Assembly (NCBI GenBank): GCA_950097015.1
Contig: CATNEN010000012.1
Span: 310,001 to 374,000, forward strand
Direction: 5' to 3'
DNA: 64,000 nt
From: Macrostomum hystrix
Lineage: Eukaryota > Animalia > Platyhelminthes
Below, piece by piece: positions 5,014 through 52,415 of the stretch (its first letter is position 1; the number at the start of each line of letters is the position of its first letter). The notes beneath the pieces are model-generated. The model was not told the DNA's origin. It worked only from the letters and a program-made list of their open reading frames with translations, and searched no databases. A program made the translations under genes and the position numbers.

Positions 5014-8000
5014 ATGCAAGAGCTTACCAGGCCGCACCTGGAGTCCTTTAACTTTGCCGCTCAGCACGGCCTGTCCTTGGCCGCTCGCAGCCTGCCCCCA
5101 GTCTATGCCGATGCGCACGCTGGTCGTTCGCGAGTTCAGGTTGGTTGCAAAGTTAACTCCGACGCGAAATGCTACAATCCCTTATTTTACCTGTATTTGA
5201 AATCCCCTCAAATCCCATCTCAGAATTTTCCAGTTTCACATATTTTTAACCTATATATAGAATCCCGTCAGATTCCATTCCGCATTTCCCCAATTCTTCT
5301 TTCTTTATCTTTTTTAAAATCCCCCCCAGATTTTCCTGTTTCCCTTATTTTTGCTTATTTTCAAAATCCCCTTAGATTTCATCCCCGATTTCCTATTTCC
5401 CCTTATTTTTACCTATATTTTAAATCGTCCCTAAGGCGGTCGGTGGCAGAGCGGTTATCGCGTTTGCCTCTCGCACCAAGGTCCCTGAGTTCGATTCCAC
5501 AGCGAGGCCACATTTATTTGGGGCGCAGCCGCGGAGAGAAGGCTTGAGGGCTTGTCGTGCAATTTATGGCCTTGTGGGCCAGCCTCCAAGGCACAGTTAA
5601 GTGCACACTGCCTGACGATGAGAAAGTCAGGGCAGATGTACACACACACCTGTGTGAGTGTGTGCCTGCGTACAGTATCTGTGTGCGTGTGTGCTCAGGA
5701 GTCAGCGAAATGCGCAGAATTGCCTTCTCGCTGGCCGCGGGTCTAGTGTCACTAAATGATGTGCCATTGCCTGCAGCCCTCCTGCAATTATTATTATTAA
5801 ATCGTCCCTAGATTTCCCAGATTTTTATCTGTATTTAAAATCCTTTCAGATTCCATCTCTGATTTCCCAGTTTCCCTCATCCCTTTACAGGTGTCCATCG
5901 CTAGCCTTGAACTCACTCAGCCGATAGATGAGCAAAGCCAGCGCCCCCTGCTGCCCAGCCAGTGCCGTCGGGCCGGCCTCACATACTCCGGCGGCCTGGT
6001 TGGACGGCTTGAGTTTCGAGTCAACGGCGAACTGATCGAATCTCTGGGCACTCGGCTTGGCAGCGTGCCAATCATGGTGCGGTCCCTGGGCGTGCTGCCT
6101 GTTCGGCAAGTCCAAGGCGGAACTAGTCGCCGCCAAGGAGGAACACAACGAAGCTGGTGGCTATTTTATTGTCAATGGCAACGAGCGCATCATTCGCATG
6201 CTCATCATGCCGCGCCGCAATTATCCCATCTCGGTGTGTCGGCCTTCATTTATGAAGAAAGGCAAATGGTTCAGCGATAAGGCTGTCATTGTGCGCTGCG
6301 TCACCGATGATCAGGTGAGGCTTCTGCCGATGTGCCAGTGCCGAATTCGCTGCTTAGATAGGTCAAGGCTACGGGACTTGCCGGTCTTTATTTGCAGGAG
6401 GGCTGCGGGCAATGGCTCATCATTTGGTGTCAGTAGACCCGCAGCCAGTGAGGAGGCAATTCTGCCCATTTCGCTGACTCAGTGAGCACACACGCACACA
6501 GACGCCGTACGCAGGCATACGCTCACACAGGTGTGTACATCTGCCCTGACTTTCTCATCGTCAGGCAGTGTACACTTCACTGTGTCTTGGGGTTGGCCCT
6601 CAAGGGCGTAGATTGCACGACAAGCCCCCAAGCCTTCTCGCCGCGGAATCGAGCTCAGGTAACTTGGCGCGAGAGTAAAACGCGTTAACAGCTCTGCCAC
6701 TCACACCCGCGTTGGGGCTCAGCGGAGTCGGACATTCTTGTAGACACCTTTTAGCTGCTTGGCACATAATGTTTAATATTAGACTACCAAACCATTTTGC
6801 CACCCGTTTTTATACCAAGAAAATATTTCTGCCTCCGGTAATTTTTCGGCAGTGCCTGAGTGCTAAATGGTGCCTGATTGGTTGACAGACTTGGCGATGG
6901 TGTCCTGTGGTTGAGCTGCGCCTAGTATTTAGGCTTGATCAGTGAAATGAGAGAAATTCGCGTCAGGATGTCCGTAGTGTCCAGCAAATCCGTCTCGATA
7001 AAGGTAGGTGACCACCGAAGACGGAGATGATGCAGGCGCATTCGGGTGACATGCTGATAAGTTATGAAGGCCTGGCAAGGCCGCACTGTGGCGCAGTGCT
7101 AATTCGTGTATAGGAGTGTATGAAATACACGAGTTCTTACGGCAAAAATCAGACCTTAGGCCAGAAACATTGAATATCCAATATCCAATTGAATATCCAC
7201 CGGTCTGAAGAGCTGGCGACTTGATTCTTGTTTCAGAAGATGCGCAACAAAAAGTTGGCCCGTGTTCTTGAGTTTCGTGTGCTTGTGTTGCTCCGTTCGG
7301 GTGTAACACAAGAAATCGTCAGCCGGAAATTTCCCTAGGTAGTAGTTATATTGTTATTGATGAAATTAGTCACTAAGCAAGAAATATTAAAGCAATGTTT
7401 TTAAGTTAAAGCATCGTTTAAAAAATTGTCTATCAGTGATAGATTATTTCGGATCAATTTTTCGCCTTCGCTCCGACATAAAAAGCCTTTAGAGATATGG
7501 GCGACTATTCGTTTCGGTTTGTTTTTTTTAATCTTCTGTTGCTACTTTTTACTGTTAAAAAATCGACGATGCAGACAATCTGGAAAGATGAAAATCTGCT
7601 CGTCTACAGGTGTATCCCAAGACACAAAGCCCAGTGAGAGTGTACACAGCGGCACGTAACTAATCCAAACTCCGCCCCCGCACCCAGACTGCCAGCGTGA
7701 ATATTCTGCACTGGCGCAATGCCTGCGATCCTGTGATGGGCTTCACCTACGAGAAAGAGCAGTTCTACGCGCCAGTAGGCCTACTATTGCGCGCCTTATT
7801 TGACGGCTCGCCAGCGGAGATGTACCAGGCCATTGTGCTGAGCCATACTGGCAGCGAGAGCGGGGATCCATCTTTGCTGTTCATGGCTAAGCAGGCTCTG
7901 CTCTATCTGCAGTCTTCCGACCAGTTTAAAACCCGACAATCTGTTCTAAAGTACATTGGCGGCTCATTCAGGTGTGCTGGCTTATCTCTTATTTAAAGCC

Positions 8001-28237: not shown

Positions 28238-31200
28238 ATGACTTCGCCAGTTGTGTCGAACCTATTCAACAGGTCCGTTGGCAGCTCCGCCAACGTCAAG
28301 CCGGACGACCGAGGCTCTGATGGTAGGCAGATTCTCGATGTCTAATCTAGCCGATTATAAGTGAGAATTATAATCCTTTTTATGGTTAGAATTCTCAATT
28401 CGACTGTACAGGATGAACTGGAAGTGGCTAAATTACGGTAGCCCTTTCCTAATCCACAGAGCCATCAGCTACCGCTTTCAACTGGCGTGTCCAGCTGTTC
28501 GTGAGCATTTCAGTTCTAGCCTATCTGCTTCTTGGCGGATTGATGTTTCATTTTTTGGAGCTGCCAAACGAGGTGTCAAGTCAAGATGGGATCAGAGCGG
28601 CTTTCCGACAGTTTTTAGGCATTTCTGTGTTTCTACTGTTTTTAGAAAAGCTAAATCCTAAACAAGATACAAGCTCCTTACGTTCTTATTTCTGAAATTA
28701 TGGGATAGGAAGAACTTTTGTGCACTCCCTTAGTTAAATAGTAGGAGCTACCTTCCATATTCTTACCGTCTTGCTTCGTAATTCCTCTTGTACAACCACC
28801 GCCTCTATAACGCACATTTTCGGAGGCTGATTGGCTGGAAAAAAGCGTCGAATCAGCCTTGCGTCTTTTCTCTCCCTCCCTGTGCAGCCACCTCACTACA
28901 CCGTCTGTTATCGGAAGCTGATTGGCTGGCACGAATTTTGTTGCAGCCTTGTGTTTCTTCTCTCCCTCCGTAACCCTGTGCAGCCACCTCACTACACCGT
29001 TTGTTATCGGAAGCTGATTGGCTGGCACGAATTTTGTTGCAGCCTTGTGTTTCTTCTCTCCCTCCGTAACCCTGTGCAGCCACCTCACTACACCGTTTGT
29101 TATCGGAAGCTGATTGGCTGGCACGAATTTTGTTGCAGCCTTGTGTTTCTTCTCTCCCTCCGTAACCCTGTGCAGCCACCTCACTACACCGTTTGTTATT
29201 CGGAGCTGATTGGCAGAGCAAAAGTTTTGAAGCAGCCTTGTGTCTCTACTCTCCCTCCCTTGCATTCAATGCATTCTTAACTCAACTTTCAGACCAGAAT
29301 CCAAATGTAGACTCCAAGAATCTGAGCGCATTGCTAGCCCAGATGGGCAAAGCGTTCAGCTCGGGCTTCACTCTGGGTGAGAATGACACACTGATAGCTC
29401 CACCGTCCAAGTGGGACTACGCCGGCTCCGTGTTCTTCTGCTTAACCGTGGTCACGACCATTGGCTACGGCAACCTGGCCCCCGCCACGCCAGTGGGCCA
29501 GTCAATCTGCTGCCTGTACGCCCTGATTGGCATTCCGATGCTGGCCGTGTTTCTCAGCGGCATCGCCGATCGAGTGAAGGCGGCTCAGGTGCGCTGCCAC
29601 ACGCTGGCCTGTTGGCGCGGTCGGGGCCGACTTCCGATCGCTGCCACATCGATTTTGTACAGCCTGGGAGGCCTTGTGTTGTTCTTTATTGTGCCGGCAG
29701 CAATTTTCACAACTACCGAAGGTTGGAGCTTTGGTCTGGGCATGTATTATAGCATGATTACGCTGGCCACTATTGGCTTTGGTGACTATGTGGCTGGTAA
29801 GTCTATCTGGGGTTCGTGGGATCTGGGATCTGGGATCCGTGGGATCTGGGATCCGTGGGATCTGGGATCCGTGGGATCTGGGATCCGTGGGATCTGGGAT
29901 CCGTGGGATCTGGGATCCGTGGGATCTGGATCCGGGATCTGGGATCCGTGGGATCTGGGATCCGTGGGATCTGGGATCCGTGGGATCTGGGATCCGTGGA
30001 TCTGGGAAAAGAAGCATTGTCTTTCTAAAAAAGCGTGCCTTTTTCTATAGCTGTTTTGGCTACTGCAAACTCAATATCCCACTCGTAACGTTTACAATGC
30101 TACATCCTAAATTGTTGATTTCCAGCCTGTCACCTGTTTGTCATGCAACTCCCCTTCAGCCTCTGCTTCGCGAACTCTGACTTTGACTATGAATCTAGCT
30201 TAAGGATTTAAGGTCCTAGTACAGTATCTTTTCGCTGGTGCTGCATGGCCATTATTTACACAGTGGGTTCCACACATGAGACCGACTGACTGACTAAGTG
30301 TATTTAGCTAGCTAATAGACACTATTGAATGAGTTAACAAATGACAGAAGGGTACACATATCGCGCATTGTTAGCCGTAGCTCGTATTAGCTACCTTTTG
30401 TGAGTCAGCGGGTTTTGAGTCTTAGCAACGAAGTAACAGTCAGTAAGCCAAGAATATACCAAGAATATTGATAATCTTATAAAGCTTTATCGGGTCGCCT
30501 CAAAAGCAGTGAAACAAATTCACGTCGTCTAAAGTCTTGTTGATCACTCTCCCATGATCAAAACGTCATGAGCTAGACCTTTCGCCAGCTCGACCCTTCA
30601 CCAGCTCGACCCTTCACCAGCTCGACCCTTCACCAGCTCGACCCTTCACCAGCTTGACCCTTCACCAGCTCGACCCTTCAACAGCTCGACCCTTCACCAG
30701 CTCGACCCTTCAACAGCTCGACCCTTCAACAGCTCGACCCTTCACCAGCTCGACCCTTCACCAGCTCGACCCTTCAACAGCTCGACCATTCACCAGCTAG
30801 ACACATCGGAAGCTTGAAACGGAACAAAATCTATAGGGCTTTTCTTGTTTTCAACCATGCAGAAGGAACTGCAAGCCAATCACAAAGCGACTAAAGCCAT
30901 TCCGTTCATGCAGGCCAGACTTACAAATCGGACGTGTACAGGTTCAGCCTGGTGTGCTGGATCTTCCTGGGCATGGTGTATGTATCTGGCCTGATCCACG
31001 CGGTGCAGGTCACCATGGAGAAGGGCACCCAGGCGGTTCACGCCAAGAGCCTTAAGGCGCACGGGCACAATGGTCAAGGTCAAGAGGTGGATGAAGGAAC
31101 CGACATTTTCGCCACGAGCCATGAGATAAGCAAACAGGAAATTGTGGACAATGGCTCTGGCGGTGTCTGCGAATTTTGTGAGCCCGGAGCTTCGAAATGC

Positions 31201-35067: not shown

Positions 35068-38000
35068 ATGGCTTGTGAAATTGCACAATTCAGTGGAAAC
35101 ATTGCTGGCAACAGTGGCGCCTCCTCGGCTAACTTTTCTCCCCTGACCCTATTTGAATGTACCATCACTAACGCCCAGATGCTGATCGAATCCATGGCCG
35201 ATAGGGAATTGCTCACAGCCCTGCGCATAGCCAGCGGCCTGCACACGCACATTGTTGGCATTATCGAGCCTCGCTGCGAGCGGGCCTTTGCCCGCAGTGA
35301 CGCCCACTCTGCCTGCTTATTGGCCGCGGCCGCTAATACCTCGTCAACTTCGTCTTCGCCCCTGCCTGCCGCCTTGTCCACTGTCCTAACAAAGACGGCT
35401 AATGGTGGCGCTTCCACTCGACCGAAATCTGAATTCGATAGCTCGGTACTGGCCGCGGCAGCTTCAGCCACCGCCGCTCGGAGCATCTCATTGTTTGGCA
35501 GCAGCAGCGTCAAAGAGGAACAATTACTTATCGAAGACGAAGAGGACTCGATGGACGACTGCCTGATTATGGAAGAGGACTCCTCCTTGCCAGCCGCCGC
35601 CGCCACATCGGCTTCAGCTATTGCCGCGGTGCCCACCTCAAGGAAGCGACCTCGACAGGAGGCGGCCGCCGCGGTCGCTGCTCCTAGTCTGCAGGAACTG
35701 TCGTCTGGCGCGTCTCTGGGCGGCGGCAATAACGAGTGCCGCATGGCTCTGCGCAACTCCTACAAAGAATTGAAGGGCAACGGACCGCATCTGTTCAACT
35801 TCTCTTTGCCGTACGCTACACGAATGTGGTCTCTTGATTCTTTTTTTAACCCCTCATCTGATCGTTTAAGTTTGTGGGTTCGAAATCTATCCCACCAATT
35901 AGTATTTCATCTATAAAAAAGCGAAATTAATTTATTCTTTCTTCAATCTAATCCTCCTAGACGTGCCATGCATATTTTCCCTCCAATCGCTTTGTAGCTA
36001 CACGGATCCCGTTAACCAGCGCGTGGCGGAGCAGGTCATGACGCACGCCCAGAAACAATTAAAGAGTCCCGGAATGCCGCAGGACATCTGGCTGAGTGAG
36101 CCCTGACTATTTTAGTGTCTATTTTTATACTCATACACAGAAGCAAATAGTCTTTAGATAGAATTTCAGATGTTGATAGTCTGGCAAGCCTTTGTTTGTA
36201 CACTAAAATGGGCCTTTATCCTTGCATTTGGTGACCTTCAGTTGATTAATTAAATGGTGCCGTTCGAATATAGTAATTATCCTATTTTTGTCTGCATAAT
36301 CGTGGATTATTAATCCATTGATTGAGCTAGCCTATTATGAATTAATCAGCCAATTAAACTTTACTTGAATTTTTTGCTAAACAGTGAGTGTTTGCTTGCC
36401 TTTCACTTTTGTTCGCACGTTTAACAATTTAACAACGCAGCTAATTAAAAATGAAGGTAACCTATCTACGTTTTGATTGGTCACGATATGGCAAGTATTC
36501 GATTAAAAAAAGAAACAAGAATATTATTTCTATATTTTGAATACTTTTAACACAAAATAATTTTAGCATTGGCGAGCGAATATTACTCTGTGATTAAAGA
36601 CGATCTGCATAAAAATAAGCTGCGCATTCGAAGAATCCGCTACAAACAGAAGGTAGCACGGCACAGCGTTTTCTGCTTTAAACCTTCTAACCAGTTCGTG
36701 CTTGCTTATCACGACACTGTCTGACAGTCGGTAATCACCCCTTCCCACTGTCTGTCATTACCCCTTCCCACTGTCTGTCATTACCCCTTCCCACTGTCTG
36801 TCATTACCCCCTCCCACTGTCTGTCATTACCCCCTCCCACTGTCTGTCATTACCCCTCCCACTGTCTGTCATTACCCCTTCCCACTGTCTGTCATTACCC
36901 CCTCCCACTGTCTGTCATTAACCCTTCCCACTGTCTGTCATTACCCCTTCCCAATGTCTGTCATTACCCCCTCCCACTGGTTGTCATTACCCCTTCCCAC
37001 TGTCTTAATCACCCCCTCCCACTGTCTGTCATTACCCCCTCCCACTGTGTTAATCACCCCTCCCACTGTCTTAATCACCCCCTCCCACTGTCTTAATCAC
37101 CCCCTCCCACTGTCTTAATCACCCCCTCCCACTGTCTTAATCACCCCCTCCCACTGTCTGTCATTACCCCCTCCCACTGTGTTAATCACCCCTCCCACTG
37201 TCTTAATCACCCCCTCCCACTGTCTTATCACCCCCTCCCACTGTCTTATCACCCCCTCCCACTGTCTTATCACCCCCTCCCACTGTCTTATCACCCCCCC
37301 CTATCCCCCCCACTGTCTTATCACCCCCTCCCACTGTCTTATCACCCCCTCCCACTGTCTTAATCACCCCCTCCCACTGTCTTAATCACCCCCTCCCACT
37401 GTCTTATCACCCCCTCCCACTGTCTGTCATTACCCCCTCCCACAGTCGGTAATCACCCCTTCCCACTGTCTGTCATTACCCCTTCCCACAGTCGGTAATC
37501 ACCCCTTCCCACTGTCTGTATCACCCTAATCCCTAACTACAGTCAGCAACTGCATCTTTCTACTGTCTCATTACTGAAACTGTGGCTAAGACCTACACAA
37601 CCATTATCTGAGCGGAAGGTAGTTTAAATCTAGTCTAAGTCACAGTTCCCATTTGTTTATTTTATAACAGCTATTTCTATAGCTTTTTTAGTTGATTAAA
37701 TTTCTGAGTGTTCTAAACTCGATGTAAATTTTATTTTTTTCCCATCAACTCAAGCGACACCATTCGACTGTTCAATTGCCAATTGCACACTACTCATCAG
37801 AAGTTAGTAGTAGACAAAGTATAATGCATGAACATTTTTACATAAAGACAGACAAATCGACACCTGTGTAATATTTGTAGGTTCGTATTTTGAGTTTTAC
37901 TGCACCATGCAGCGAGTTGTGCAGAGCAGGCGCTGCAGCAACAAGCTCAACATGTGCCGACTGCGTAGCCGGCAGAAGGTCCGCTTATAAAAGCTTGGAA

Positions 38001-38872
38001 TCTCTTTGTCTGGGGTTTGGTCCTACTATTGTCACCGAAATGTCTGTTTTTAATATTGGCACCTGGCGTGTGTTACCGACACTGGCTTAGCTTAGTTTAT
38101 CTACGTATTATAGGCCGTATGAAAATAAAGCAAAGGCAACTCAATTTGCAACACATTTTTGCAGGTGAACTGTTTGATTTTGCGCAAGATCTGAGCTCTT
38201 TTGCGCTGAAAATGCGAGAAAAATTTGCCACTGAAAAGCGTCGGCAAAGAAATCGCCAAAGAGTATGTTGCGATGGCCCTGCACCGATTCACGTTCGCCT
38301 TGTTGGCGTTTTTCGTCAAATAAATGTTATAAGTTCTAGGAAAATTACAATTTTCAAAATATGCTACTATTGCTACTAAAAGTAGAAATAGAAAGAATCT
38401 ACAAAATTTTATGACAAATTAAAAGAAACCCATTTCCCCCCACTAATTTACGGAAACAGTTGTATCAGTTCCCTCATTCTCAAATCCTAACCTTTATGCA
38501 TGTCGCCTTTAGAAATTAGCCCGTCGTCAGAAGAGCTTCGAACTTCTCGCTAGCAGCCTGTCTACTAATATGTTCGACAAGTACCGCATCCTATTGTCTA
38601 AGGACTACACATCATCAGATGAGGACGCAGCGGCTACGGACTCAACTAGCGAAGATGCTGGCGGCCTGCGCGTTCGCACCCTAGCCTGGGAGTCTGCCGA
38701 GATGGCCGATATGAAGCGTCAGCTTGACGACGCTTTCTTAGAAACCTGCGCCAATCAGAAGCAAGCTCAACAGTTGCGTAAGACGGTGCGCGACGGGGCC
38801 TGCGTCAGTAGCCGGCCGCCGCCTTCCGACTGTCCGGATTGGGCTCTTTCGGAAGACTTCAAAACTGCGTAG
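35068..38872 (+). CDS. Paralogue A of an uncharacterised protein resembling C14orf93-type proteins. Exons 35068-35810, 35998-36095, one of three alternative exons, 38513-38872
   Basis: Shares SPLTLFExTITNAQMLxESMAxREL, ECxxxxRxxYKxLKGNGPHLFxFSxP, a 98-nt exon and KLxRRQKSFEL..YTSSDE..VRxLxWES..LD..RPPP with paralogue B; splice phases consistent. Family resemblance is from memory of the motif order, not a search. Confidence 0.85.
36567..36652 (+). CDS. Paralogue A alternative exon A1 (86 nt): (T)LASEYYSVIKDDLHKNKLRIRRIRYKQK
   Basis: TTTTAG| ... AAG|GTAGC; phase 1 to 0; open frame; ends in basic RxRxKQK. Confidence 0.7.
36725..37520. repeat. 21-23-bp C-rich minisatellite (CCCACTGTCTGTCATTACCCCTT and variants)
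   Basis: Direct repeats between exons A1 and A2. Confidence 0.95.
37881..37978 (+). CDS. Paralogue A alternative exon A2 (98 nt): (S)SYFEFYCTMQRVVQSRRCSNKLNMCRLRSRQK
   Basis: TTTGTAG| ... AAG|GTCCG; phase 1 to 0; open frame. Confidence 0.72.
38165..38262 (+). CDS. Paralogue A alternative exon A3 (98 nt): (S)ELFDFAQDLSSFALKMREKFATEKRRQRNRQR
   Basis: TTTTGCAG| ... AGA|GTATGT; phase 1 to 0; if read in phase 0 (after A1 or A2) it hits TGA. Confidence 0.75.
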
Positions 38873-42998: not shown

Positions 42999-45900
42999 AT
43001 GGCAGACGTTCTGGCGCCTCACTCTAGCCTTCTGCCTCCGGGCAATAGTTTCTCTCCGCTGACGCTATTCGAGTCCACCATCACCAACGCCCAGATGCTG
43101 GTGGAGTCCATGGCCGAGCGGGAGCTGTTCTCCGCCTTGAAGATTATCGGCAATCTGCACAGCCACGTGGTGCACTCCATGGAGCCGCGCTACTGTCGCG
43201 CCTTTGATCGTAGCGACCGCCTAGCCGAACTGGAGGCAGCTGGCCTTGTTGCCAGCGTCTCCGGACAGCAGCAGCAACATCAGCAGCAGCTGCTGCATCG
43301 AGAATCGACAGCCGCTTCGTCCATGTCTGTGGGGATCAGCGCCAAGGAGGAGAAGGCCGCCTCGCTAGGTGATCTTGGCGGCGCTAGCAGCGTTCTTGGC
43401 GCCGCTCTTGGCGCCATTAAGGTCAGCTTTGCTTAATTTAGTATTGCTCAGACTGTATGTAATCAGTGGGTCTTTGACCTCCCAGGTAATAGTCGATGGA
43501 TAATCGATCTGGGTCTTTGTCCTCCCCAGGTAATAATCTAGGGATAACTGATCTGGGTATTTCTCCTCTCGGTTAATAGTCTAGGGATAACTGATCTGGG
43601 TATTTCTCCTCTCGGGTAATAGTCTAGGGATAACTGATCTGGGTCTTTGTCTTCCTCTGGTAATAGTCTAGGGGGAACTGATCTGGGTCTTTGTCTTCCT
43701 CTGGTAATAGTCTAGGGGGAACTGATCTGGGTCTTTGTCTTTCTCTGGTAATAGTCTAAGGATAACTGATTTGGGTCTTTGTCCTCCCCAGATAATACTC
43801 GAGATAGTCTGTGTGTTCTTGACATCCTCTTGTCATTGTTACTAAGGATCATTGACCTACCTGTCTTGCCCTTGTACTGCTTTGGCTACTAAATATTGAG
43901 CCTACAAATATAATTAGAATTCCCCTAGCGCTGCACTCGCCACTGCCCGCCAATCTTCAGGTTGAAGGCGACGAATACGAAGCGGACGAGGAAGAAGAAG
44001 ATGATTGCATGATCACGGAAGAGCTGAACGACGACAGTCTTAGTGCCGGATTCCCCTACGCCAAGATGCCCCGACTGGACTTATCCGCTGACTATTCCGG
44101 CGCCGGTGCTAGCGCCTTTGGCATTGGCGGCGGCGGTGGAGGCGTTGGCGGAGACGTGCCAGCCGAATGCAAGACAATCATGCGACGCGCCTATAAAACA
44201 CTGAAAGGAAATGGACCGCACCTGTTCGACTTTAGTATGCCGTGAGTTGGCCTTCGAAACTTGTGCAATTTTTCATGAACCAGCCAGTGAGTAATCGCAA
44301 TTATAATCAACAACAATGGCCGACATGATTATGTGATTAAATTTTGTGAGCATAAATGTTTTGCTTATATCGATGGTTTTTTGTCACCGGGTCCCCGACG
44401 GGAATCGTTGAATATCTCGACGAAGCCGATGTTGTGTGATTCTGGAAGTTGTCTCTTCGGATAGAGCGCAAATTTTAGCCCGTGTTCTGCATTTTCACGG
44501 CGATTGGTTGAATATTTTGAGAGAATATTTTCAGTTTAACAGTAAAAAATGTGGATATTTGAAGCACCAATGGTCTTTATACAGTTGAGCTTTGCGACGT
44601 TTTCGCCCCATTGGGCCAAATGTGCAGCCATTGCGCGGCGCATATCAAGGCTGCGTACGGCTGTTCAGTCCACGGACTGGGGGGACGCCACACCCACCCT
44701 CAAGTACCCCAGCTAATGCTGGCACCCATTTAAGGACACAGATTGTTCCAGTGGAGTCTCGAATCGAACCCCCGACCTTCAAGTCGAGATTCCGACACTA
44801 TAACCACTAGGCTACAACTCCTAAGCATCTACGCAGATTTGTGTTATTTTCTGCGCCATCTCACACCGCAGATTCTCTGCCGAGGCCAATCAACAAGTAG
44901 CCGCCATGGTCATGTCCAAGGCCAAGGAAATGGCGGAAGGCAAAGGCTGGCCGGATGACGTTTGGCAAAGTGAGTCTCAAATTGCTGTATTTCTATCACC
45001 TGTGTACTAGCCAACTTAGTTTCATAAATGCAGGAGGTGCGAGAGGCTGTTAATTGCATACCTTAGTTTAGCGAATCAACATTTGTCCTTTGTTATCGAT
45101 TGATAAAATCATTAAAAGTGGAGAATAAAATTTACTTATTGCAATTAAGTCATAGCCTGAGTCTAATTATCCCGGCTAGAGATTTTCAATTGCGTCTCTT
45201 GCACTGCCTGCATAGCAAATAAAAGTATTAGCTTAGTACATACCATTGTGCATTTGAAATACTCTCTTAATACTACTTGCAAGTACAGGCACTATATTGT
45301 TGCTAAAAAGTAAAAACAAGTCTTCTAACCCACTGTTTATTGTCTTTCTCCTTGCCTACACTTGGTCTGGAAACGTCGCAAGTTCTTTGGCTTGAGCAAA
45401 TTTTATCTATAGTGTTAGGCTTTTAGGTTTAGAAAAAATTAATAACTACCGAAATTTCTGTTTCATCTCCTTTACTTGAGTTCATAAATTAATTTTGTCT
45501 CCATGCGTGCTCTAATATTTATTAAATTGTTGCCTAAAGACTGACGCAACATTTTGCGATCAAAACTAAACTAACCTGTATGAATTAATTAACTAATCAA
45601 TCATTAATTGCTAAATTGTTGACCTATTCTCTTTGCCAGGTCTGACGTGTGTTTTTGCTCGAATTATGCAATATAGCTGCATTGTACTTCTGATCGCTGA
45701 ATATAAAGCTGTATTTGTTACGGCCTAGATAGAACTTATAATATGCAACACCCTGTGTTGTAGGATTGCTAAGGCGCTGTGTAGCCATGTTCGCTGAGTT
45801 CCGTCGGGACATGCGGCTTAGATTGAGAAATTCAGTAAGTGTTTTCAAGTGTGGCGCTTAATTGATCATGTTTAAATGGACTCAGCGGCTGGGTAGGTGT

Positions 45901-48900
45901 GGCCAAAAATACTGGGTTACCAGGCTAAATCTCGAATGTAATCATTTCTTCTTACTACAAACGGTACATCTGCACATCGCACAGCCAAATGGTTCAATTA
46001 ATTTACAAGCAAAGTCAAATCAACTTTGTTGGCTTTGAAACTCAATAATATAAGCTCAGTGTGCAATAGTGCACGCTGCTTATGTACGGTGACATTGGCT
46101 TAAGGGATTCCTAGTTTAGATGTCCTTTAGCGATGAAGGAAACTAAGGCTGCTGCGTTTCCAGAAAATGTCTGGCTTCCCTTGGTCCAAGCAACAACCTT
46201 TATTTTAAGGTCGTTACCTTGTGTCAAAATTAATTTCAGAGCTACCCAAAGACGGCCGTATTAGTTTTATATTTTCGTCTTTTAGATTAAATGCGAGAAA
46301 TCGTCTAAAATCTTATGTAAGTAACTCAGTAAAGGTCTATTGAGCAAGCTATGTAAAATAGTTAAACTGTCCTTCTACCACTGAGACAGCTCAAACGATG
46401 AGGTTCCGTTTCCAGGCGAAGTTAAATTTCAAAAATTAAAATAAACCTTTTGCTGCACCGTTTTCTAAACAAACTAAGGCCGATTACACACCAAAATCAC
46501 CATGCAACAACAACGCATTGAATTTCAGAACTGCCTAAAGAGGGTCGCATACCTATTATTTTCAAATCGTTTAGAACTGACGCTAAGAAACGTTTTAAAG
46601 CTCTTGTAAGTTGGCCTTGTCGGAATCTGCTTCAGAAATGCGAGCATTTAATCCTTATTTGCTGTCTTTGTTGCTTCTTAATTTCTTGCTTTCTTTATGA
46701 TCTTGCCGCTGCATTTCCTCTTAAGTAGCAGTTCTGCTGTGTAACTTAGGATTTCAGTCGAGAGGGTGATTTTTGTGTCCCTGAGCAATATGCTTCATTT
46801 CCAATGGCTTCGGTTTTACCCGGCATTAGCTTTAGTAGAAAAAATTCAAGAGAGTTTGGCTGCCTCCAGTCCATGGACTGAACAGCTGTACATAGCCTTT
46901 AGATGCGCCGCGAACTAGCTGCGGCAGCGTCACTGGCTGTACATCAACCTATATGGTGCTAAAAGTACATGCAAGTGTTTAGAAGAGTCATCGTTTTCTA
47001 TTAAATATCCCAGAAAATGTATTAAGCATTGAAACTATGATTTCAGGACTGCCGAGTGAAAACCGAACTTCCACAGTGTTTTCTAAGTTGCGCTTCAGCT
47101 CTAGACACACACTGAAACTCAATGTGAGAGTTTAGTTCTCTTTCTCACCAGCTCATTCTCACATTTGCTTTGTCATTTTCAAACTTTAAGCAAAGATATT
47201 TCGGGGCTTTTCGGACAAAGTACAGGATTGTAGAATGCAGGCTTCATGTGCACTGAAATCTAAAAATAGTCCATCTTTCTTGTGACGTTTCTGAGGTAAA
47301 GAGAATGAACAGAACTACCCCCCTTGGACTATTACGTCGCTAATATCTGACAGCCGGAACACATGTGTCAAACTCCGATTGCAGATTTGCCGTACAAGGC
47401 CAGACCGGACAGAGTATTTTGTCATATACGCAGCGCACTTAGGGCAAAGTACAGAGAAAATGTAAGGATTGCCGCCTATTATTTGTATAGTGTTGCGAGC
47501 TAATTGTTGGTCCTCTAAAGTTGACGCAGGTGGAAATGGGATTTTGAATCTCCGCCTTAGGAGAAATTGCTCGTGTCCTTGAATTAAGACGCCAAATTCC
47601 ACTTTACTTTATTCAGTTCAGCCAGCTGCAAAATTGGTAGGTCTTACCCAACTGATAAGTCTCATTTCTGTCTTATCTATTTACTGATTTCTGTTGTAGC
47701 CTTCTAGAAAGCTAATAAAATTCGCAGTTTAATTGGGATCCATTGATTTCTTCATCTGAGCTATGACGACGTTTTCAGCGCTAGACATCATCATTAGGCA
47801 GTGAATTCTTCGTATTTTATTAGCCATGTTATTGGCAATTTGCAGAGCTGCCCTACGCGTCTCGCACTATATTCCTGTTTATTGACTTGCGCAGGAAGAT
47901 GCGTTTCCGATTTAGAAGCTTTGTAAGCTCTGCTTTGTCATGCTTTAGCTTAGAATAATGGCATTTATTCTAGGGCGGGATACTGCGTGAGACTGCGGAC
48001 AGAGATGAAGCCTCAGCAGCTTGCGATGTTTGCCCCCCCCATACCCCCACCTTGTTAGCAATTTTCACAAATATTCATCCTGATTATACAAACAAAATAC
48101 TGATCCCGCTTGCAGACCTCCCCAAGGACAGTCGTATTAACTATCTGCACTCTAATTTTGGTACTAAAATTCGTGCAAAATATCGGATTAGCGTAAGTCC
48201 AGCGTAATTAGAAAAGAATTTGCGACTTTCATTGCAGCCTTCTTTAGAAAGAATCTTACAATAAAGATCGAGTTTTCAAACCGCTTTTACTGCCGCTCAT
48301 TCCATTCCGCTTCCTAAAAAGGGATTCCTACCCCGTGTAGGCCGCTGTACATATTTCAAAACTTTCGCTCAAGAAGCCGCATGAAACTAAGGCTGAATGT
48401 AAGTAGCCTGTTGCGCGCATGCATGCTTTATTTGAGAAATTTCTAATTTAATTAGATCCACGTCTACTAAGCTACAACTGGCGCCGTTTCCAAACAAAAA
48501 CCAATTGAGGTCAAATAAAAGATTAAGAAAGTTTTTAAAAAATCCTCAGCTAAATAGCCTCACATTAGCTAGCAAAATACGAAATTTCTGCGCCTAATTT
48601 TCAGGGATTCCATGCCGAGGCCGCATACTATACATGTTCTCCGATTTTTCACTAAAGGCCCGGTCTAAATTCAAGCAGCTAGTGAGTAGTTTCGGCCCAT
48701 CAGAGTAGCCATATATTGCTGCGATTGTTTAAACACGCCTAGTTGACGTTTCCACTCCAAAACCAGAGTGCAAAATCCAATAGATGGTTAATGCGAACTC
48801 TCCATATTTATGCACATTCAATTGGAATAATATCGCATTGTAGACTTACCCAAGGCTGGCAGGTTGTCTGTAATATTTAGCGATTTCAAACGACAAGTGC

Positions 48901-51900
48901 ACGACAAGTACCGCGGTCTAGTAAGATTACACAATTTAAAGCATAGCTTTGTCTCTAGTATAGTTGCTGAAGCCAAAGACTCTGACAATGGATGTTGTCA
49001 GGCGACTCGCCTCCGAGGTTAACGGTAGAAAGACCATGCAATTTTACCCTTCAAATACCCACTGCGCTTTGCAATTAACTAACCTCCAAAGCCGTGCGAC
49101 GTCAGCATTGTCGATGCCGATGTTTTGTGCTTCTGGGAGGTTAGTTCATCGGATAGAGTGGAGAATTTTAACCCATACTCAGGATTTTCATGGCGATAGG
49201 TTTAATATTTTAGCAGATAAAATATTGAAAAATACTGAAAAATAATAAAAAGATGGGTATCTGGAATACCCCCTGGTCTTTCTACTGTTAATGATTTTCC
49301 AGTATTTTTCTGGCTGCTTTAGCGATTTCTTGCTGTCAATCTAGTCTTGCCGCTGTATCTCTGTCAGTCGCTACCTAATCATTTTGTTCTCTAATGCAGG
49401 GCTGCCAAAGGCTGGCCGACTCTGCGAGATATTCAGAGACTTTGGGAAACAGATTCGGACTAAACTGCGGCTAAGCGTAAATTGCGATTATCATCGATTT
49501 CATTGCTAAAGCCATAGGAATCCGAGCCCTACTTTATATATATAATTGCAGAAGAACTGCCCATTCTGCCTATTTCGCTGACTCCTGAGCACACACGCAC
49601 ATGGATACTGTACGCAGGCACACGCTCACCCAGTTGTGCACATCTGCCCTGATTTTTTCATCGTCAGGCAGTGTACACTCACTGTGCCGCCCTTAATAAG
49701 TGTGGCCTCGCCGCGGAATCGAGCTCAAGGACCTTGGTGCGGGGGGGCAAACGCGTTAGACCGCTCCGCCACTCGCCCCCCCTAAGCCCTACTATCAATC
49801 TTGTCACCTTTCATCTTTTAATTCCGCTTCGAGAGGCTAGAGCTTCGGACTCGGGCCGAGAAGTCGAAAGTTCGAACCTCAGACCAAGAGAGACAGTTTG
49901 TATGCTTGAGCACGGCAATTAATTTGCCTAGAGTGCTTTATTTCACCCAGCTGTAAAATGGGTACCAGCAATAGCTAGGGGAGAAATTTATCTGTGTAGC
50001 GGTCTCCCCTGTCCAGAATCCAGATTGAATATCTGTAAACAGCCTTTCGGTGCGTTGCACAATGGCTGTAGCTGTGCCACTGGCTGTACATCTGGCCCAA
50101 CTGGGCTAGGTGTCGTTTCTATATCTTTAATAAATAAGCTTTTTTACAATATCTTAGAATCCCAAATTAGTACTATTTCCCTAATTTAATGCCTTCTTAC
50201 TGCAGGGCTGCCAAAGACTGGCCGGCTGTGCGAGATTTTCTGGGACTTTGGGAAACAGATTCGACTCAAACTGCGGCTGACTGTAATTAGTTCCATCTGT
50301 GGCATCGATTTGCTGAATGCATGTGCCATGCCGCCAATGCGGGAAAGCTCTGACTGCCTCAATTCTGATTCCTTCCCGTATTTTCTCTATTTTCTATTTG
50401 ATGATCTGTCTGGAGACACTAGTTGTTTAAGACATTTGGTTAGCCGTTATTACAGACTCCATCCATTGCTGTTAATACTATTTATCATTACTTCCTGCAC
50501 AGGATTGCCAAGGACTAGCCGAATGATTGACATTTTCTGGGACTTTAGAAAGATTATGCGCTCCAAATTGCGCAACCAAGTAATTAATTGGGGTTAAGTT
50601 TCCAGTGGCACAGTTCTTTTATAGACGTATTATCTTCCTCTATTCGGTAAGAGTATCGTGCTAATTTGAAATGGTACGACATTTTCATGCCTTTCATCTA
50701 TCATACACTCATAATACACTATTGTACAGTCCCACCCCGTCCCTACCTGCAACCCTAATCCCTTGCCTCTGCAGTTTCATCCCATTTTAATCATTACCCT
50801 CCCTTCAGCTGAATCCCTTCCCTCCGTTCAGCTGAATCCCTTCCCTCCGTTCAGCTGAATCCCTTCCCTCCGTTCAGCTGAATCCCTTCCCTCCGTTCAG
50901 CTGAATCCCTTCCCTCCGTTCAGCGGAATCCCTTCCCTCCGTTCAGCTGAATCCCTTCCCTCCGTTCAGCTGAATCCCCTCCCTCCGTTCAGCTGAATCC
51001 CTTCCCTCCGTTCAGCTGAATCCCTTCCCTCCGTTCAGCGGAATCCTTCCCTCCGTTCAGCTGAATCCCTTCCCTCCGTTCAGCTGAATCCCTTCCCTCC
51101 GTTCAGCCTAATCCCTTCCCTCCGTTCAGCTGAATCCCTTCCCTCCGTTCAGCTGAATCCCTTCCCTCCGTTCAGCTGAATCCCTTCCCTCCGTTCAGCT
51201 GAATCCCTTCCCTCCGTTCAGCTGAATCCCTTCCCTCCGTTCAGCTGAATCCCTTCCCTCCGTTCAGCTGAATCCCTTCCCTCCGTTCAGCTGAATCCCT
51301 TCCCTCCGTTCAGCTGAATCCCTTCCCTCCGTTCAGCGGAATCCTTCCCTCCGTTCAGCTGAATCCCTTCCCTCCGTTCAGCTGAATCCCTTCCCTCCGT
51401 TCAGCCTAATCCCTTCCCTCCGTTCAGCTGAATCCCTTCCCTCCGTTCAGCTGAATCCCTTCCCTCCGTTCAGCTGAATCCCTTCCCTCCGTTCAGCTGA
51501 ATCCCTTCCCTCCGTTCAGCTGAATCCCTTCCCTCCGTTCAGCTGAATCCCTTCCCTCCGTTCAGCTGAATCCCTTCCCTCCGTTCAGCTGAATCCCTTC
51601 CCTCCGTTCAGCTGAATCCCTTCCCTCCCATCAGCCTAATCCCTTCCCTCCGTTCAGCTGAATCCCTTCCCTCCGTTCAGCTGAATCCCTTCCCTCCGTT
51701 CAGCCTAATCCCTTCCCTCCGTTCAGCGGAATCCCTTCCCTCCGTTCAGCTGAATCCCTTCCCTCCGTTCAGCTGAATCCCTTCCCTCCGTTCAGCTGAA
51801 TCCCTTCCCTCCGTTCAGCTGAATCCCTTCCCTCCGTTCAGCGGAATCCTTCCCTCCGTTCAGCTGAATCCGTTTTCCCCTTGCAGTAAAACCAATGTTC

Positions 51901-52415
51901 TGTAACAAAAACACTTTCTCATGGCCTGCAGTCTCCCTTTCCTTGCCCATCTACTCTTTTCCCCTGTTCCCCAGCCTCTCAGAGCGTCCCGGTGTAGGGG
52001 AACCCAATTCCAGAGTGCATTGTTAGTTTCATAACTCCTAAGCCTTCACCATTCGCCGGCGGTACAGAAGCTCAACCGGCGTCAGAAGAGCTTCGAACTA
52101 GTTGCCACCAGCCTGAGCTCAGATGAGCTAGAAAAATTCCGCGTCATCCTGACCCGCGACTACACCAGCTCGGACGAGGAGTGCGGCTCCGGCGGCTCCG
52201 ACCAGCTGCGGGTGCGCGAACTGTCCTGGGAGTCGGACGAGGTCAAACGATTGAAACGCCAACTGGATCAGGTCTACATGGACAATTGCGCCACCACCAA
52301 GCAGAAGCAGCAGCTGAGCCGCTGCATCCGGGATCCGCTGCGCTCCAGGTCGCAGCGCCCGCCGCCAGACGGCGCTCCCGACTGGGCGCTGAAGCCGCCG
52401 ATGAGGAAGACCTAA
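42999..52415 (+). CDS. Paralogue B of the C14orf93-like protein. Exons 42999-43421, 43961-44241, 44872-44969, one of 13 alternative exons, 52068-52415
   Basis: Homology to paralogue A; phases 0, 2, 1, then 0 after the cassette; the 98-nt exon matches A in length and phase; last exon KLNRRQKSFEL..YTSSDEE..VRELSWES..*. Confidence 0.87.
43470..43790. repeat. About 44-bp minisatellite in paralogue B intron 1 (GGTAATAGTCTAGGGATAACTGATCTGGGTCTTTGTCTTCCTCT)
   Basis: About 7 direct repeats. Confidence 0.9.
44590..44815 (-). mobile_element. tRNA-derived SINE family 2
   Basis: Reverse complement starts GTAGCCTAGTGGTT (A box) .. GGGTTCGATTC (B box), then AAATGGGTGCCAGCATTAGCTGG; related to 49830-50140. 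Confidence 0.75.
45764..45834 (+). CDS. Paralogue B alternative exon B1 (71 nt): (R)LLRRCVAMFAEFRRDMRLRLRNS
   Basis: TTGTAG| ... |GTAAGT; phase 1 to 0; two codons shorter but keeps FxxF..RxRxR. Confidence 0.7.
46240..46316 (+). CDS. Alternative exon B2 (77 nt): (K)LPKDGRISFIFSSFRLNARNRLKSY
   Basis: ATTTCAG| ... |GTAAGT; open frame in phase 1. Confidence 0.85.
46529..46605 (+). CDS. Alternative exon B3 (77 nt): (K)LPKEGRIPIIFKSFRTDAKKRFKAL
   Basis: ATTTCAG| ... |GTAAGT. Confidence 0.85.
47047..47123 (+). CDS. Alternative exon B4 (77 nt): (R)LPSENRTSTVFSKLRFSSRHTLKLN
   Basis: ATTTCAG| ... |GTGAGA. Confidence 0.82.
47385..47461 (+). CDS. Alternative exon B5 (77 nt): (N)LPYKARPDRVFCHIRSALRAKYREN
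   Basis: TTGCAG| ... |GTAAGG. Confidence 0.83.
47846..47922 (+). CDS. Alternative exon B6 (77 nt): (K)LPYASRTIFLFIDLRRKMRFRFRSF
   Basis: TTTGCAG| ... |GTAAGC. Confidence 0.84.
48116..48192 (+). CDS. Alternative exon B7 (77 nt): (N)LPKDSRINYLHSNFGTKIRAKYRIS
   Basis: CTTGCAG| ... |GTAAGT. Confidence 0.85.
48322..48398 (+). CDS. Alternative exon B8 (77 nt): (R)IPTPCRPLYIFQNFRSRSRMKLRLN
   Basis: Weak AAAAAG| acceptor, strong |GTAAGT donor; motif conserved. Confidence 0.75.
48605..48681 (+). CDS. Alternative exon B9 (77 nt): (R)IPCRGRILYMFSDFSLKARSKFKQL
   Basis: TTTTCAG| ... |GTGAGT. Confidence 0.85.
48844..48920 (+). CDS. Alternative exon B10 (77 nt): (N)LPKAGRLSVIFSDFKRQVHDKYRGL
   Basis: ATTGTAG| ... 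|GTAAGA. Confidence 0.85.
49400..49476 (+). CDS. Alternative exon B11 (77 nt): (R)LPKAGRLCEIFRDFGKQIRTKLRLS
   Basis: AATGCAG| ... |GTAAAT. Confidence 0.86.
49540..49785 (-). mobile_element. SINE family 1 copy 3 (partial) inside the exon array
   Basis: Same reverse-complement head and hairpin as 6386-6712. Confidence 0.85.
49830..50140 (+). mobile_element. SINE family 2 copy with a central CACCCAGCTGTAAAATGGGTACC block (resembles Deu/Nin-domain SINEs)
   Basis: tRNA-like head (GTTCGAACC), conserved central block, A/T tail; superfamily label is from memory. Confidence 0.7.
50206..50282 (+). CDS. Alternative exon B12 (77 nt): (R)LPKTGRLCEIFWDFGKQIRLKLRLT
   Basis: ACTGCAG| ... |GTAATT; 13 mismatches to B11. 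Confidence 0.86.
50503..50579 (+). CDS. Alternative exon B13 (77 nt): (R)LPRTSRMIDIFWDFRKIMRSKLRNQ
   Basis: TGCACAG| ... |GTAATT. Confidence 0.86.
50800..51872. repeat. 23-bp pyrimidine-rich minisatellite (CAGCTGAATCCCTTCCCTCCGTT) in the last intron of paralogue B
   Basis: About 46 direct repeats. Confidence 0.97.

What the first reader, a model, noticed from the sequence alone, without database searches (positions are those of the whole stretch)
45764..52415. The variable cassette is a basic amphipathic helix, a possible switchable DNA-recognition module
Seen: each cassette ends in R-x-[KR]-x-[RK]-x-x and continues into constant KLNRRQK, giving one long Arg/Lys-rich stretch. Scaffold positions (P3, R7, F12, hydrophobic 15 and 23) are fixed while positions 8-11, 13-14 and 16-19 are hypervariable. 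Inference: the surrounding motif order (F..S.....N..V, basic helix, YTSSDE, VRxLxWES..LD, RPPP) resembles C14orf93-type nuclear proteins, from memory. A fixed scaffold with variable exposed residues suggests altered nucleic-acid or partner specificity, by analogy with Drosophila lola and mod(mdg4), which swap DNA-binding modules. In such a repeat-rich genome the targets could be different satellite or transposon sequences (speculative).
Basis: inference. Interest (0 to 1): 0.75.

Follow-up and report, generated by a model that had tools for sequence, protein, structure and literature searches.

The report
Swappable basic helix in flatworm protein
A Macrostomum flatworm gene splices in one of 13 alternative mini-exons, each giving a different, species-conserved version of one basic helix inside a folded domain of an uncharacterised animal protein family; what that helix binds (DNA, RNA or protein) is still unknown.

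Summary
Thirteen tandem exons (45764-50579; twelve of 77 nt, one of 71 nt) all have AG/GT sites and the same phases. Each encodes L-P-x3-R-x3-aliphatic-F-x2-aromatic followed by a basic ladder that runs into the constant KLNRRQK exon (52068).

AlphaFold2 on the near-identical public M. lignano protein puts the cassette in one continuous 36-residue helix inside a confident 205-residue domain (pLDDT 91), not in a linker.

The M. lignano orthologue keeps the array almost one-to-one. Cassette dN/dS is 0.07 at dS 1.1, so each variant is individually maintained.

RNA-like contigs join exon 3 to four different cassettes and never join cassette to cassette.

An invariant 17-nt intronic docking site (45367-45383) occurs exactly three times in the 220-Mb genome, once in each B-type paralogue. 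Complementary selectors lie 80-135 nt upstream of nine cassettes, as in Dscam exon 6.

In five other phyla the cassette is a single ancient exon of a metazoan-wide uncharacterised family.

Three parts of the reading are not supported. "Amphipathic" fails a hydrophobic-moment test. The Pfam model DUF4616 (by my recollection the C14orf93 family) gives no hit. No DNA-binding fold is recognised. DNA recognition remains one untested possibility.

The scan had already noted this array (s1-291350).

The parts
42999..43421 (+). Paralogue B coding exon 1 (ATG to AIK|gt), N-terminal helical hairpin motif FSPLTLFE...
   Evidence: matches M. lignano P0006/P0005
43961..44243 (+). Paralogue B exon 2 (acidic stretch to NGPHLFDFSM-P), ends in phase 2 at gtgagt
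44872..44969 (+). Paralogue B exon 3 (98 nt, ...NQQVAAMV...GWPDDVWQ), donor used by all cassette joints
   Evidence: GT..AG joints from 44969
45367..45383 (+). Docking site, invariant 17-mer CTGGAAACGTCGCAAGT in the intron after exon 3
   Evidence: exact copies only in the three B-type paralogues of the 220-Mb genome
45764..45834 (+). Cassette 1 (71 nt, two residues shorter, no P3)
   Evidence: orthologue L035:12876-12946
46240..46316 (+). Cassette 2; selector core 46151-46163
46529..46605 (+). Cassette 3; selector 46396-46423; joint 44969>46529 in three runs
47047..47123 (+). Cassette 4 (no M. lignano counterpart, no clear selector); joint 44969>47047 in one run
47385..47461 (+). Cassette 5; selector 47278-47302; joint 44969>47385
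47846..47922 (+). Cassette 6; selector 47757-47785; protein identical in M. lignano despite 10 synonymous changes
48116..48192 (+). Cassette 7 (H at position 12); selector 48014-48042; joint 44969>48116 in three runs; used in public protein P0006
48322..48398 (+). Cassette 8; selector 48212-48248
48605..48681 (+). Cassette 9; selector 48475-48510
48844..48920 (+). Cassette 10; selector 48738-48771
49400..49476 (+). Cassette 11 (no clear selector); a contig leaves the genome at its donor 49476
50206..50282 (+). Cassette 12; weaker selector 50102-50126; a contig starts exactly at the acceptor
50503..50579 (+). Cassette 13 (no clear selector)
52068..52415 (+). Constant terminal exon (KLNRRQK...YTSSDEE...WES...RPPP...stop). 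It supplies the second half of the long helix and the C-terminal subdomain.

Best explanation
The cassette is the flatworm-duplicated version of an ancient, discrete penultimate exon of a metazoan-wide, functionally uncharacterised protein family.

Structure. In the protein the cassette supplies a short L-P cap and then the first about 21 residues of a 36-residue helix. The constant exon completes that helix. The helix is the spine of a compact, roughly 200-residue alpha/beta domain with no recognisable relative among solved structures. Invariant cassette positions are the cap (L2, P3, R7), a hydrophobic anchor (11, 12, 15, 19, 23) and a fixed basic ladder (16, 20, 22, 24). With the constant K/R residues, part of that ladder forms a positive ridge along one face (inferred from a helical wheel). 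The remaining positions differ between cassettes, but each is held constant across species.

Switching. The transcript must carry a number of cassettes equal to 1 modulo 3 to stay in frame. An invariant intronic docking site can pair with one selector upstream of a cassette at a time (inferred mechanism, Dscam exon 6 type). The gene therefore makes 13 proteins that differ only in one surface patch of one domain, that is, in binding specificity.

Ligand (inferred, not shown). A polyanion such as RNA or DNA is the single most likely class (about 40%). A protein partner is next (about 35%).
For: Gene model and cassettes.

Helix and fold: the full-length model of P0006 (near-identical to paralogue B, with cassette 7) has helix 189-224. 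The domain-only model has pLDDT 91.4, pTM 0.78 and the same helix.

Selection, window versus M. lignano L035: 12 orthologous cassette pairs give dS 1.13, dN 0.081, ratio 0.072. Flanking introns are only about 60% identical under forced global alignment. Constant exons give ratios of 0.02. 'Variable' positions differ in 19% of orthologous comparisons but 85% of paralogous ones.

Splicing: GT..AG joints run from 44969 to cassettes 3, 4, 5 and 7, and no cassette-to-cassette joint is listed. Public proteins P0005, P0006, P0003 and the pair P0008/P0012 each carry one cassette.

Docking and selectors.

Ancient single exon in amphioxus, starfish, sea cucumber, brachiopod and mussel. Family breadth.

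Charge: +7 to +10 over cassette positions 16-26 plus KLNRRQK.
Against: No binding activity of any kind is shown.

No coordinates were available, so which cassette residues are exposed is inferred from conservation and a helical wheel, not read from the model.

Only the cassette-7 isoform was folded. In the alignment used, the homologues have a longer and different segment here, and the first half of the cassette helix has the lowest confidence in the domain (pLDDT 77-83).

Positions 8-15 are hydrophobic on nearly all faces, so some 'variable' residues may be core rather than surface. Acidic residues are common at positions 10 and 14, which is unusual for a DNA-contacting face.

The RNA evidence comes from contigs of runs of unrecorded type. 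It cannot show rare double inclusions or usage levels, and six cassettes (1, 2, 6, 8, 10, 13) have no transcript-level trace in the output I saw.

Four cassettes (1, 4, 11, 13) have no convincing selector.
Confidence: 0.6

Rival explanations
1. One reading: the cassette is a DNA-recognition helix, and the isoforms read different DNA sequences (for example satellites or transposons), as lola/mod(mdg4) isoforms do.
For: There is a fixed basic ladder next to variable residues and a net charge of +7 to +10. Many relatives in other phyla have an N-terminal coiled coil, so they may be dimers. Weak but recurring structural matches of the C-terminal subdomain to DNA-binding core-binding domains of tyrosine recombinases (Z 3.6-4.3). 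The possible distant relative C14orf93/P19 localises to the nucleus (PMC10163356).
Against: No Pfam, PDB-sequence or fold match to any DNA-binding family. All structural Z scores are below the tool's stated noise level. Acidic residues are frequent at variable positions 10 and 14. The kinship with C14orf93 is unproven, and that protein is also reported as secreted. The architecture differs from lola/mod(mdg4).
Confidence: 0.25
2. The variable helix is a protein-protein interface. The isoforms differ in the partner they bind, or in homo- versus hetero-oligomer pairing (an isoform code like Dscam or protocadherins, but intracellular).
For: The first half of the cassette is hydrophobic and aromatic with variable residues. 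Strong cassette-specific constraint. There are about 25 paralogues in the genome, several with their own arrays, which suggests a combinatorial family. Coiled-coil N-termini occur in relatives.
Against: No partner is known. The strongly basic second half is constant in character across isoforms, so it is not obviously a specificity element.
Confidence: 0.3
3. The cassettes are functionally interchangeable. The array matters only for regulation of expression, or is a neutral by-product of tandem duplication, and the basic stretch is merely a nuclear localisation signal or linker.
For: All cassettes share the same basic pattern, so a localisation signal would work in every isoform. Bipartite NLSs are predicted in C14orf93/P19.
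Against: Cassette-specific residues are conserved across species at near-saturated dS (ratio 0.07; two cassettes have 8-10 synonymous and 0 replacement changes). AF2 places the cassette in a helix of a confident domain, not in a linker. The array, docking site and selectors are conserved in three paralogues and two species.
Confidence: 0.08

Closest known systems
Dscam1 exon 6 cluster of arthropods (docking site / selector sequences; Graveley 2005; PMC4691838, PMC8791459, PMC6071210)
   Same: A tandem array of same-length, same-phase exons. There is one highly conserved docking site in the intron after the upstream constitutive exon. A complementary selector lies about 100 nt upstream of most variable exons. 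Exon length is not a multiple of three, so the reading frame enforces exclusivity.
   Different: The animal is a flatworm, not an arthropod. The protein has no Ig-domain match and no Pfam domain at all. There are 13 variants, not 48. Four cassettes lack a clear selector. No mutational test was done. The swapped unit is a helix, not half an Ig domain.
Drosophila lola and mod(mdg4)
   Same: One gene yields many isoforms that share a common part and differ in a putative recognition module.
   Different: By my recollection those genes use alternative 3'-terminal exons (partly trans-spliced), each encoding a complete zinc-finger or FLYWCH domain. Here an internal 26-residue piece of a single domain is exchanged, and the C-terminus is constant.
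C14orf93 / RTFC / mouse 4931414P19Rik (Pfam DUF4616, PF15394, by my recollection)
   Same: ESM-Atlas clusters that look like this domain by features and by shape include 12-17% members with DUF4616. It has predicted basic bipartite NLSs and nuclear localisation. It is equally uncharacterised.
   Different: The PF15394 model hits no family member and nothing in this genome. No alignment to a real C14orf93 sequence could be made here. C14orf93 is also reported as secreted.
Mutually exclusive exons that swap part of a folded domain (Drosophila Mhc, 14-3-3 zeta, MRP1; human ATE1, PMC7797038)
   Same: An internal structural element of one domain is exchanged, with competing RNA structures choosing the exon.
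   Different: Those proteins have known biochemical functions and mostly 2-8 variants. Here the domain is of unknown function and fold.

Membership tests
C14orf93-type proteins (Pfam PF15394, DUF4616) | Significant match to the PF15394 profile | tested here: not met
   No hit at E<=0.01 in 149 family members. None at E<=10 in 19 diverse members. None at E<=1 in a six-frame search of the whole genome.
C14orf93-type proteins (Pfam PF15394, DUF4616) | Remote homology shown by profile-profile or structure comparison with a true C14orf93 | tested here: inconclusive
   Atlas look-alike clusters carry DUF4616 in 12-17% of members (feature score 0.90-0.93; TM 0.63-0.67 normalised by the smaller protein). 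No C14orf93 sequence could be obtained from a tool. The third word search returned only four unnamed proteins (two of them already in the query alignment), none carrying a Pfam domain.
Mutually exclusive exon cluster with docking/selector RNA pairing (Dscam exon 6 type) | Tandem homologous exons of equal length and phase with intact splice sites | tested here: met
   13 exons, 77 nt (one of 71), phase 1 in and phase 0 out, AG/GT.
Mutually exclusive exon cluster with docking/selector RNA pairing (Dscam exon 6 type) | Exactly one variable exon per mRNA | tested here: inconclusive
   Joints run from exon 3 to cassettes 3, 4, 5 and 7, and no cassette-to-cassette joint is listed. Public proteins carry one cassette each. 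By arithmetic, only 1, 4, 7... cassettes keep the frame. Contigs cannot exclude rare double inclusion.
Mutually exclusive exon cluster with docking/selector RNA pairing (Dscam exon 6 type) | One conserved docking site next to the constitutive exon | tested here: met
   The 17-mer at 45367-45383 is identical in five loci from two species. It has three exact copies in 220 Mb, all in B-type paralogues; the tool's control pattern gave 0 matches.
Mutually exclusive exon cluster with docking/selector RNA pairing (Dscam exon 6 type) | A selector complementary to the docking site upstream of each variable exon | tested here: met
   Nine of 13 cassettes have a selector 80-135 nt upstream. Duplex energies are -20 to -28 kcal/mol against about -17 for shuffled sequence. 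The selectors are conserved at orthologous M. lignano cassettes. Cassettes 1, 4, 11 and 13 have none that is convincing.
Mutually exclusive exon cluster with docking/selector RNA pairing (Dscam exon 6 type) | Disruption and compensatory mutations change exon choice | not testable with these tools
   Needs minigenes or genome editing.
lola / mod(mdg4)-type isoform genes | Alternative 3'-terminal exons, each encoding a zinc-finger/FLYWCH DNA-binding domain | tested here: not met
   The cassettes are internal, 24-26 residues, have no Pfam domain, and the terminal exon is constant.
Basic-region DNA-binding helices (bZIP/bHLH) | Profile match, with the basic region directly followed by a zipper or HLH | tested here: not met
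   No Pfam hit for the domain. The only PDB-sequence hint is a bHLH-zipper chain at E 0.53. The helix is followed by an alpha/beta subdomain.
Tyrosine-recombinase core-binding (SAM-like) domain | Structural match clearly above background | tested here: inconclusive
   Five to nine of the 50 rows in each search are such domains, but Z is only 3.6-4.3, below the tool's noise level.

The most novel reading that the evidence does not exclude
A nuclear 'isoform code'. The three B-type paralogues (13, at least 6 and at least 3-4 cassettes) and further paralogues with their own arrays would produce dozens of versions of a new nucleic-acid-binding fold. Each version would have a different recognition helix, and the exon would be chosen by a Dscam-like docking/selector RNA switch that arose independently in flatworms. 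The targets could be different repeat or transposon families in these repeat-rich genomes.
Probability: 0.15. Interest if true: 0.9.

Novelty: new variant of a known kind. Interest (0 to 1): 0.72.

Why it matters
Large mutually exclusive exon arrays controlled by docking/selector pairing are documented mainly in arthropod genes, with simpler competing-structure cases in vertebrates. A full-text search found none in flatworms.

This case is a 13-exon array with an invariant docking site. It is kept across species at saturated synonymous divergence, and it sits in a protein family that exists across animals but has no known function or fold.

It gives the family its first functional handle. Evolution has singled out one helix as the place where diversity pays, which points experiments straight at the binding surface.

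By my recollection Macrostomum lignano can be made transgenic, so both the RNA switch and the isoform specificities could be tested directly.

Tried and rejected
- Pfam on every exon and on 149 relatives: only coiled-coil noise.
- PF15394 against the genome: nothing. PF26792 is not in the tool's library.
- Third word search with a 33-sequence profile: four unnamed proteins only, two of them already in the query alignment and none carrying a Pfam domain.
- PDB by sequence: nothing below E 0.07.
- Foldseek against the PDB on both models: best E 0.7.
- VIA-align wide search: best Z 4.7 and 5.3, below the noise level.
- Complex prediction, homodimer of the C-terminal domain: 'no answer'. This is evidence neither for nor against.
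- Hydrophobic moment: the whole helix is never above shuffles. Positions 8-19 are significant in only 2 of 13 cassettes. The label 'amphipathic' is dropped.
- The 13-mer selector motif is not enriched window-wide (15 matches against 11 expected). It is enriched only locally: 6 plus-strand matches inside the 4.8-kb array, where about 0.4 are expected by my scaling.
- Transposon origin of the family: only 1 of 6 outgroup loci has a transposase (Transposase_21) neighbour. Not supported.
- dN/dS between young paralogous cassettes (11/12, 12/13, 2/3): pN is below pS, so there is no sign of positive selection, though power is low.
- Literature: nothing on Macrostomum mutually exclusive exons or on DUF4616/DUF8263.
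- The public M. lignano proteins P0001-P0008 served as spliced models instead.
Full report
WHAT IS THERE

The window holds two tandem paralogous genes on the + strand.

Paralogue B has three constant coding exons: 42999-43421, 43961-44243 and 44872-44969. It then has an array of 13 short exons between 45764 and 50579, and a constant terminal exon at 52068-52415.

Every array exon is flanked by AG and GT, needs one base from exon 3, and ends in phase 0. Twelve are 77 nt and the first is 71 nt.

Conserved positions are L/I2, P3 (12/13), R7 (13/13), aliphatic 11 (13/13), F12 (12/13), aromatic/aliphatic 15 and 23 (13/13), R/K/H20, K/R22 (12/13) and R/K24 (13/13). The strict ending pattern fits 10 of 13 cassettes.

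Paralogue A (35068-38872) has three longer cassettes at the same place: 36567-36652, 37881-37978 and 38165-38262.

WHOSE GENE IT IS

Word searches found only Macrostomum lignano proteins. P0006 is near-identical to paralogue B and carries cassette 7 letter for letter. P0005, P0003/P0001, P0004, P0007 and P0008 are paralogues, each with a single, different segment at that place. P0008 and P0012 are the same protein apart from the cassette.

The window's own genome is 220 Mb in 42 contigs. It holds 25 copies of the terminal exon, often in tandem pairs. It is a Macrostomum species other than the sequenced M. lignano: dS between orthologous exons is 0.65-1.5.

A profile search of 1.84 billion representatives found 385 relatives. 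Named ones come from starfish, sea cucumber, acorn worm, amphioxus, brachiopod and mussel, and all are labelled 'uncharacterized'.

In five outgroup genes the segment homologous to the cassette is one discrete exon of about 37 codons. It is directly followed by a terminal exon that begins at the same KL.RRQ boundary, and there is no second copy in the locus. So the cassette is an ancient exon that was tandemly duplicated in the Macrostomum lineage.

IS IT USED, AND ONE AT A TIME?

Contigs of three runs of the window's own species were laid on the region. The run type is not recorded, but exon depth is about five times intron depth. They contain GT..AG joints from the exon 3 donor (44969) to the acceptors of cassette 3 (three runs), 4, 5 and 7 (three runs).

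Contigs also break exactly at the donors of cassettes 7 and 11 and at the acceptor of cassette 12. No cassette-to-cassette joint is listed.

By arithmetic, 1 + 77k is divisible by three only for k = 1, 4, 7..., so skipping all cassettes or including two shifts the frame. Contigs cannot exclude rare exceptions.

HOW THE CHOICE IS PROBABLY MADE

An inverted-repeat scan showed one site in the intron after exon 3 pairing with several sites further down.

The site is a 17-mer at 45367-45383. It is conserved 27/29 in M. lignano at the same distance from exon 3. The 17-mer is identical in all five B-type loci examined, three paralogues in two species, while its flanks differ. It occurs exactly three times in the 220-Mb genome, once in each B-type paralogue, and the tool's control pattern gives none.

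Complementary stretches lie 80-135 nt upstream of cassettes 2, 3, 5, 6, 7, 8, 9 and 10, and more weakly cassette 12. Duplex energies are -20 to -28 kcal/mol against about -17 for shuffled sequence. The selectors are conserved upstream of the orthologous M. lignano cassettes and of cassettes in the other paralogues.

This is the architecture described for Dscam exon 6. No such case in flatworms turned up in the literature search. Pairing itself is inferred, not shown.

WHAT THE CASSETTE IS IN THE PROTEIN

I used the public spliced protein P0006 instead.

With 148 relatives as alignment, AlphaFold2 gives a disordered acidic middle and a confident C-terminal part. The C-terminal 205 residues alone give pLDDT 91.4 and pTM 0.78.

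The cassette is residues 184-209. After the L-P-K-D turn, a single helix runs from residue 189 to 224. That covers cassette positions 6-26 plus KLNRRQKSFELVATS of the constant exon. pLDDT is 77-83 in the first half of the cassette helix and 91-98 further on.

Partial structural alignments treat residues 120-195 and 205-322 as separate units. From this I infer that the helix bridges two subdomains and that the cassette's hydrophobic positions pack on the exon 2/3 helices. I had no coordinates to verify this.

The helix is not amphipathic by the usual measure. It is bipartite. Positions 8-15 are hydrophobic or neutral (charge -2 to +1). Positions 16-26 plus KLNRRQK carry +7 to +10.

On a helical wheel the fixed basic residues 16, 20 and 24 line up with K27 and R31 of the constant part as one ridge. 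The variable positions 17, 18, 21 and 25 lie beside it (my inference).

ARE THE VARIANTS FUNCTIONALLY DISTINCT?

The M. lignano orthologous locus (L035) has the same array in the same order. There are two exceptions: cassette 4 is missing there, and cassette 2 is duplicated there.

Over 12 orthologous pairs (298 codons), dS is 1.13, dN is 0.081 and the ratio is 0.072. Flanking introns are only about 60% identical under forced global alignment. Cassettes 6 and 7 have 10 and 8 synonymous changes and no replacement. Constant exons give ratios of 0.02.

Positions that differ in 85% of comparisons between cassettes differ in only 19% of comparisons between orthologues. Each cassette's own sequence is therefore under selection. 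That is hard to reconcile with interchangeable isoforms.

WHAT IT BINDS IS OPEN

No Pfam family, solved structure or fold matches the domain. A weak recurring resemblance of residues 205-322 to the DNA-binding core-binding domains of tyrosine recombinases (Z 3.6-4.3) is below the noise level and is only a lead.

The Pfam model DUF4616 (by my recollection the C14orf93 family) hits nothing. ESM-Atlas look-alikes include clusters with 12-25% DUF4616 or DUF8263 members, so a remote link is possible but unproven.

C14orf93/P19 itself has no known biochemical function. It is reported to be both nuclear and secreted, with predicted bipartite NLSs (PMC10163356).

VERDICT

The family assignment and the DNA-recognition idea remain untested.

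The combination is a new variant of a known kind of system and is well worth experiments. It consists of an ancient exon, a flatworm-specific 13-fold array, a docking/selector switch, and strong cassette-specific constraint in a domain of unknown fold.

The scan had already flagged the array (s1-291350) and the paralogue A array (s1-291391). I re-derived both independently.

Noticed in passing
window 36567-36652, 37881-37978, 38165-38262: Paralogue A has three longer alternative cassettes (86, 98 and 98 nt) at the homologous position. Each has an M. lignano orthologue (L035:6210-6295, 6502-6599, 6814-6911). The third is the one used in public proteins P0001/P0003.
   Followed up: partly
G000:C2:6198000-6207000 (L036) and G000:C34:7401400-7411399 (L037): Two further B-type paralogues carry their own arrays (at least 6 and at least 3 cassettes of 77 nt), with the same 17-nt docking site and selectors. 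The genome holds about 25 copies of the family's terminal exon, mostly in tandem pairs or triplets.
   Followed up: partly
window 47129-47229: Between cassettes 4 and 5 there is an open stretch ending ...FSNFKQRYFGAFRTKYRI|gt. It looks like a decayed or divergent extra cassette without a proper acceptor.
   Followed up: no
window 50593-50605: A selector-like match to the docking site (GTTAAGTTTCCAG) lies 14 nt after the donor of the last cassette, with no cassette following it. It may be a relic of a lost exon or a regulatory pairing.
   Followed up: no
window 50630-51900: About 1.3 kb of a 23-nt tandem repeat fills the last intron, between the array and the terminal exon. A similar 22-23-nt repeat lies in the paralogue A array (36730-37520).
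   Followed up: no
window 46866-46912 and 49563-50118: Two related interspersed repeats inside the array introns attract very high contig depth (hundreds to thousands) and many loose ends in the laid runs. They are a highly repeated, transcribed element, possibly a tRNA-related SINE.
   Followed up: no
window 29193-30050: A long ORF with two pore signatures (TIGYGN ... TIGFGD) looks like a two-pore-domain potassium channel gene just upstream of the two paralogues. Its 3' part runs into a GS/WD-rich simple repeat.
   Followed up: no
L047:1-4370 (Apostichopus japonicus CM075708.1): The sea-cucumber family member sits next to a 1047-residue Transposase_21 (PF02992) gene. Five other outgroup loci have ordinary neighbours, so a transposon link is not supported, but it was checked in only six loci.
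   Followed up: partly
public proteins P0002, P0021, P0024 (M. lignano): Several deposited M. lignano gene models read through a cassette donor into the intron, or chain two cassettes. These are annotation errors caused by the unrecognised array.
   Followed up: no
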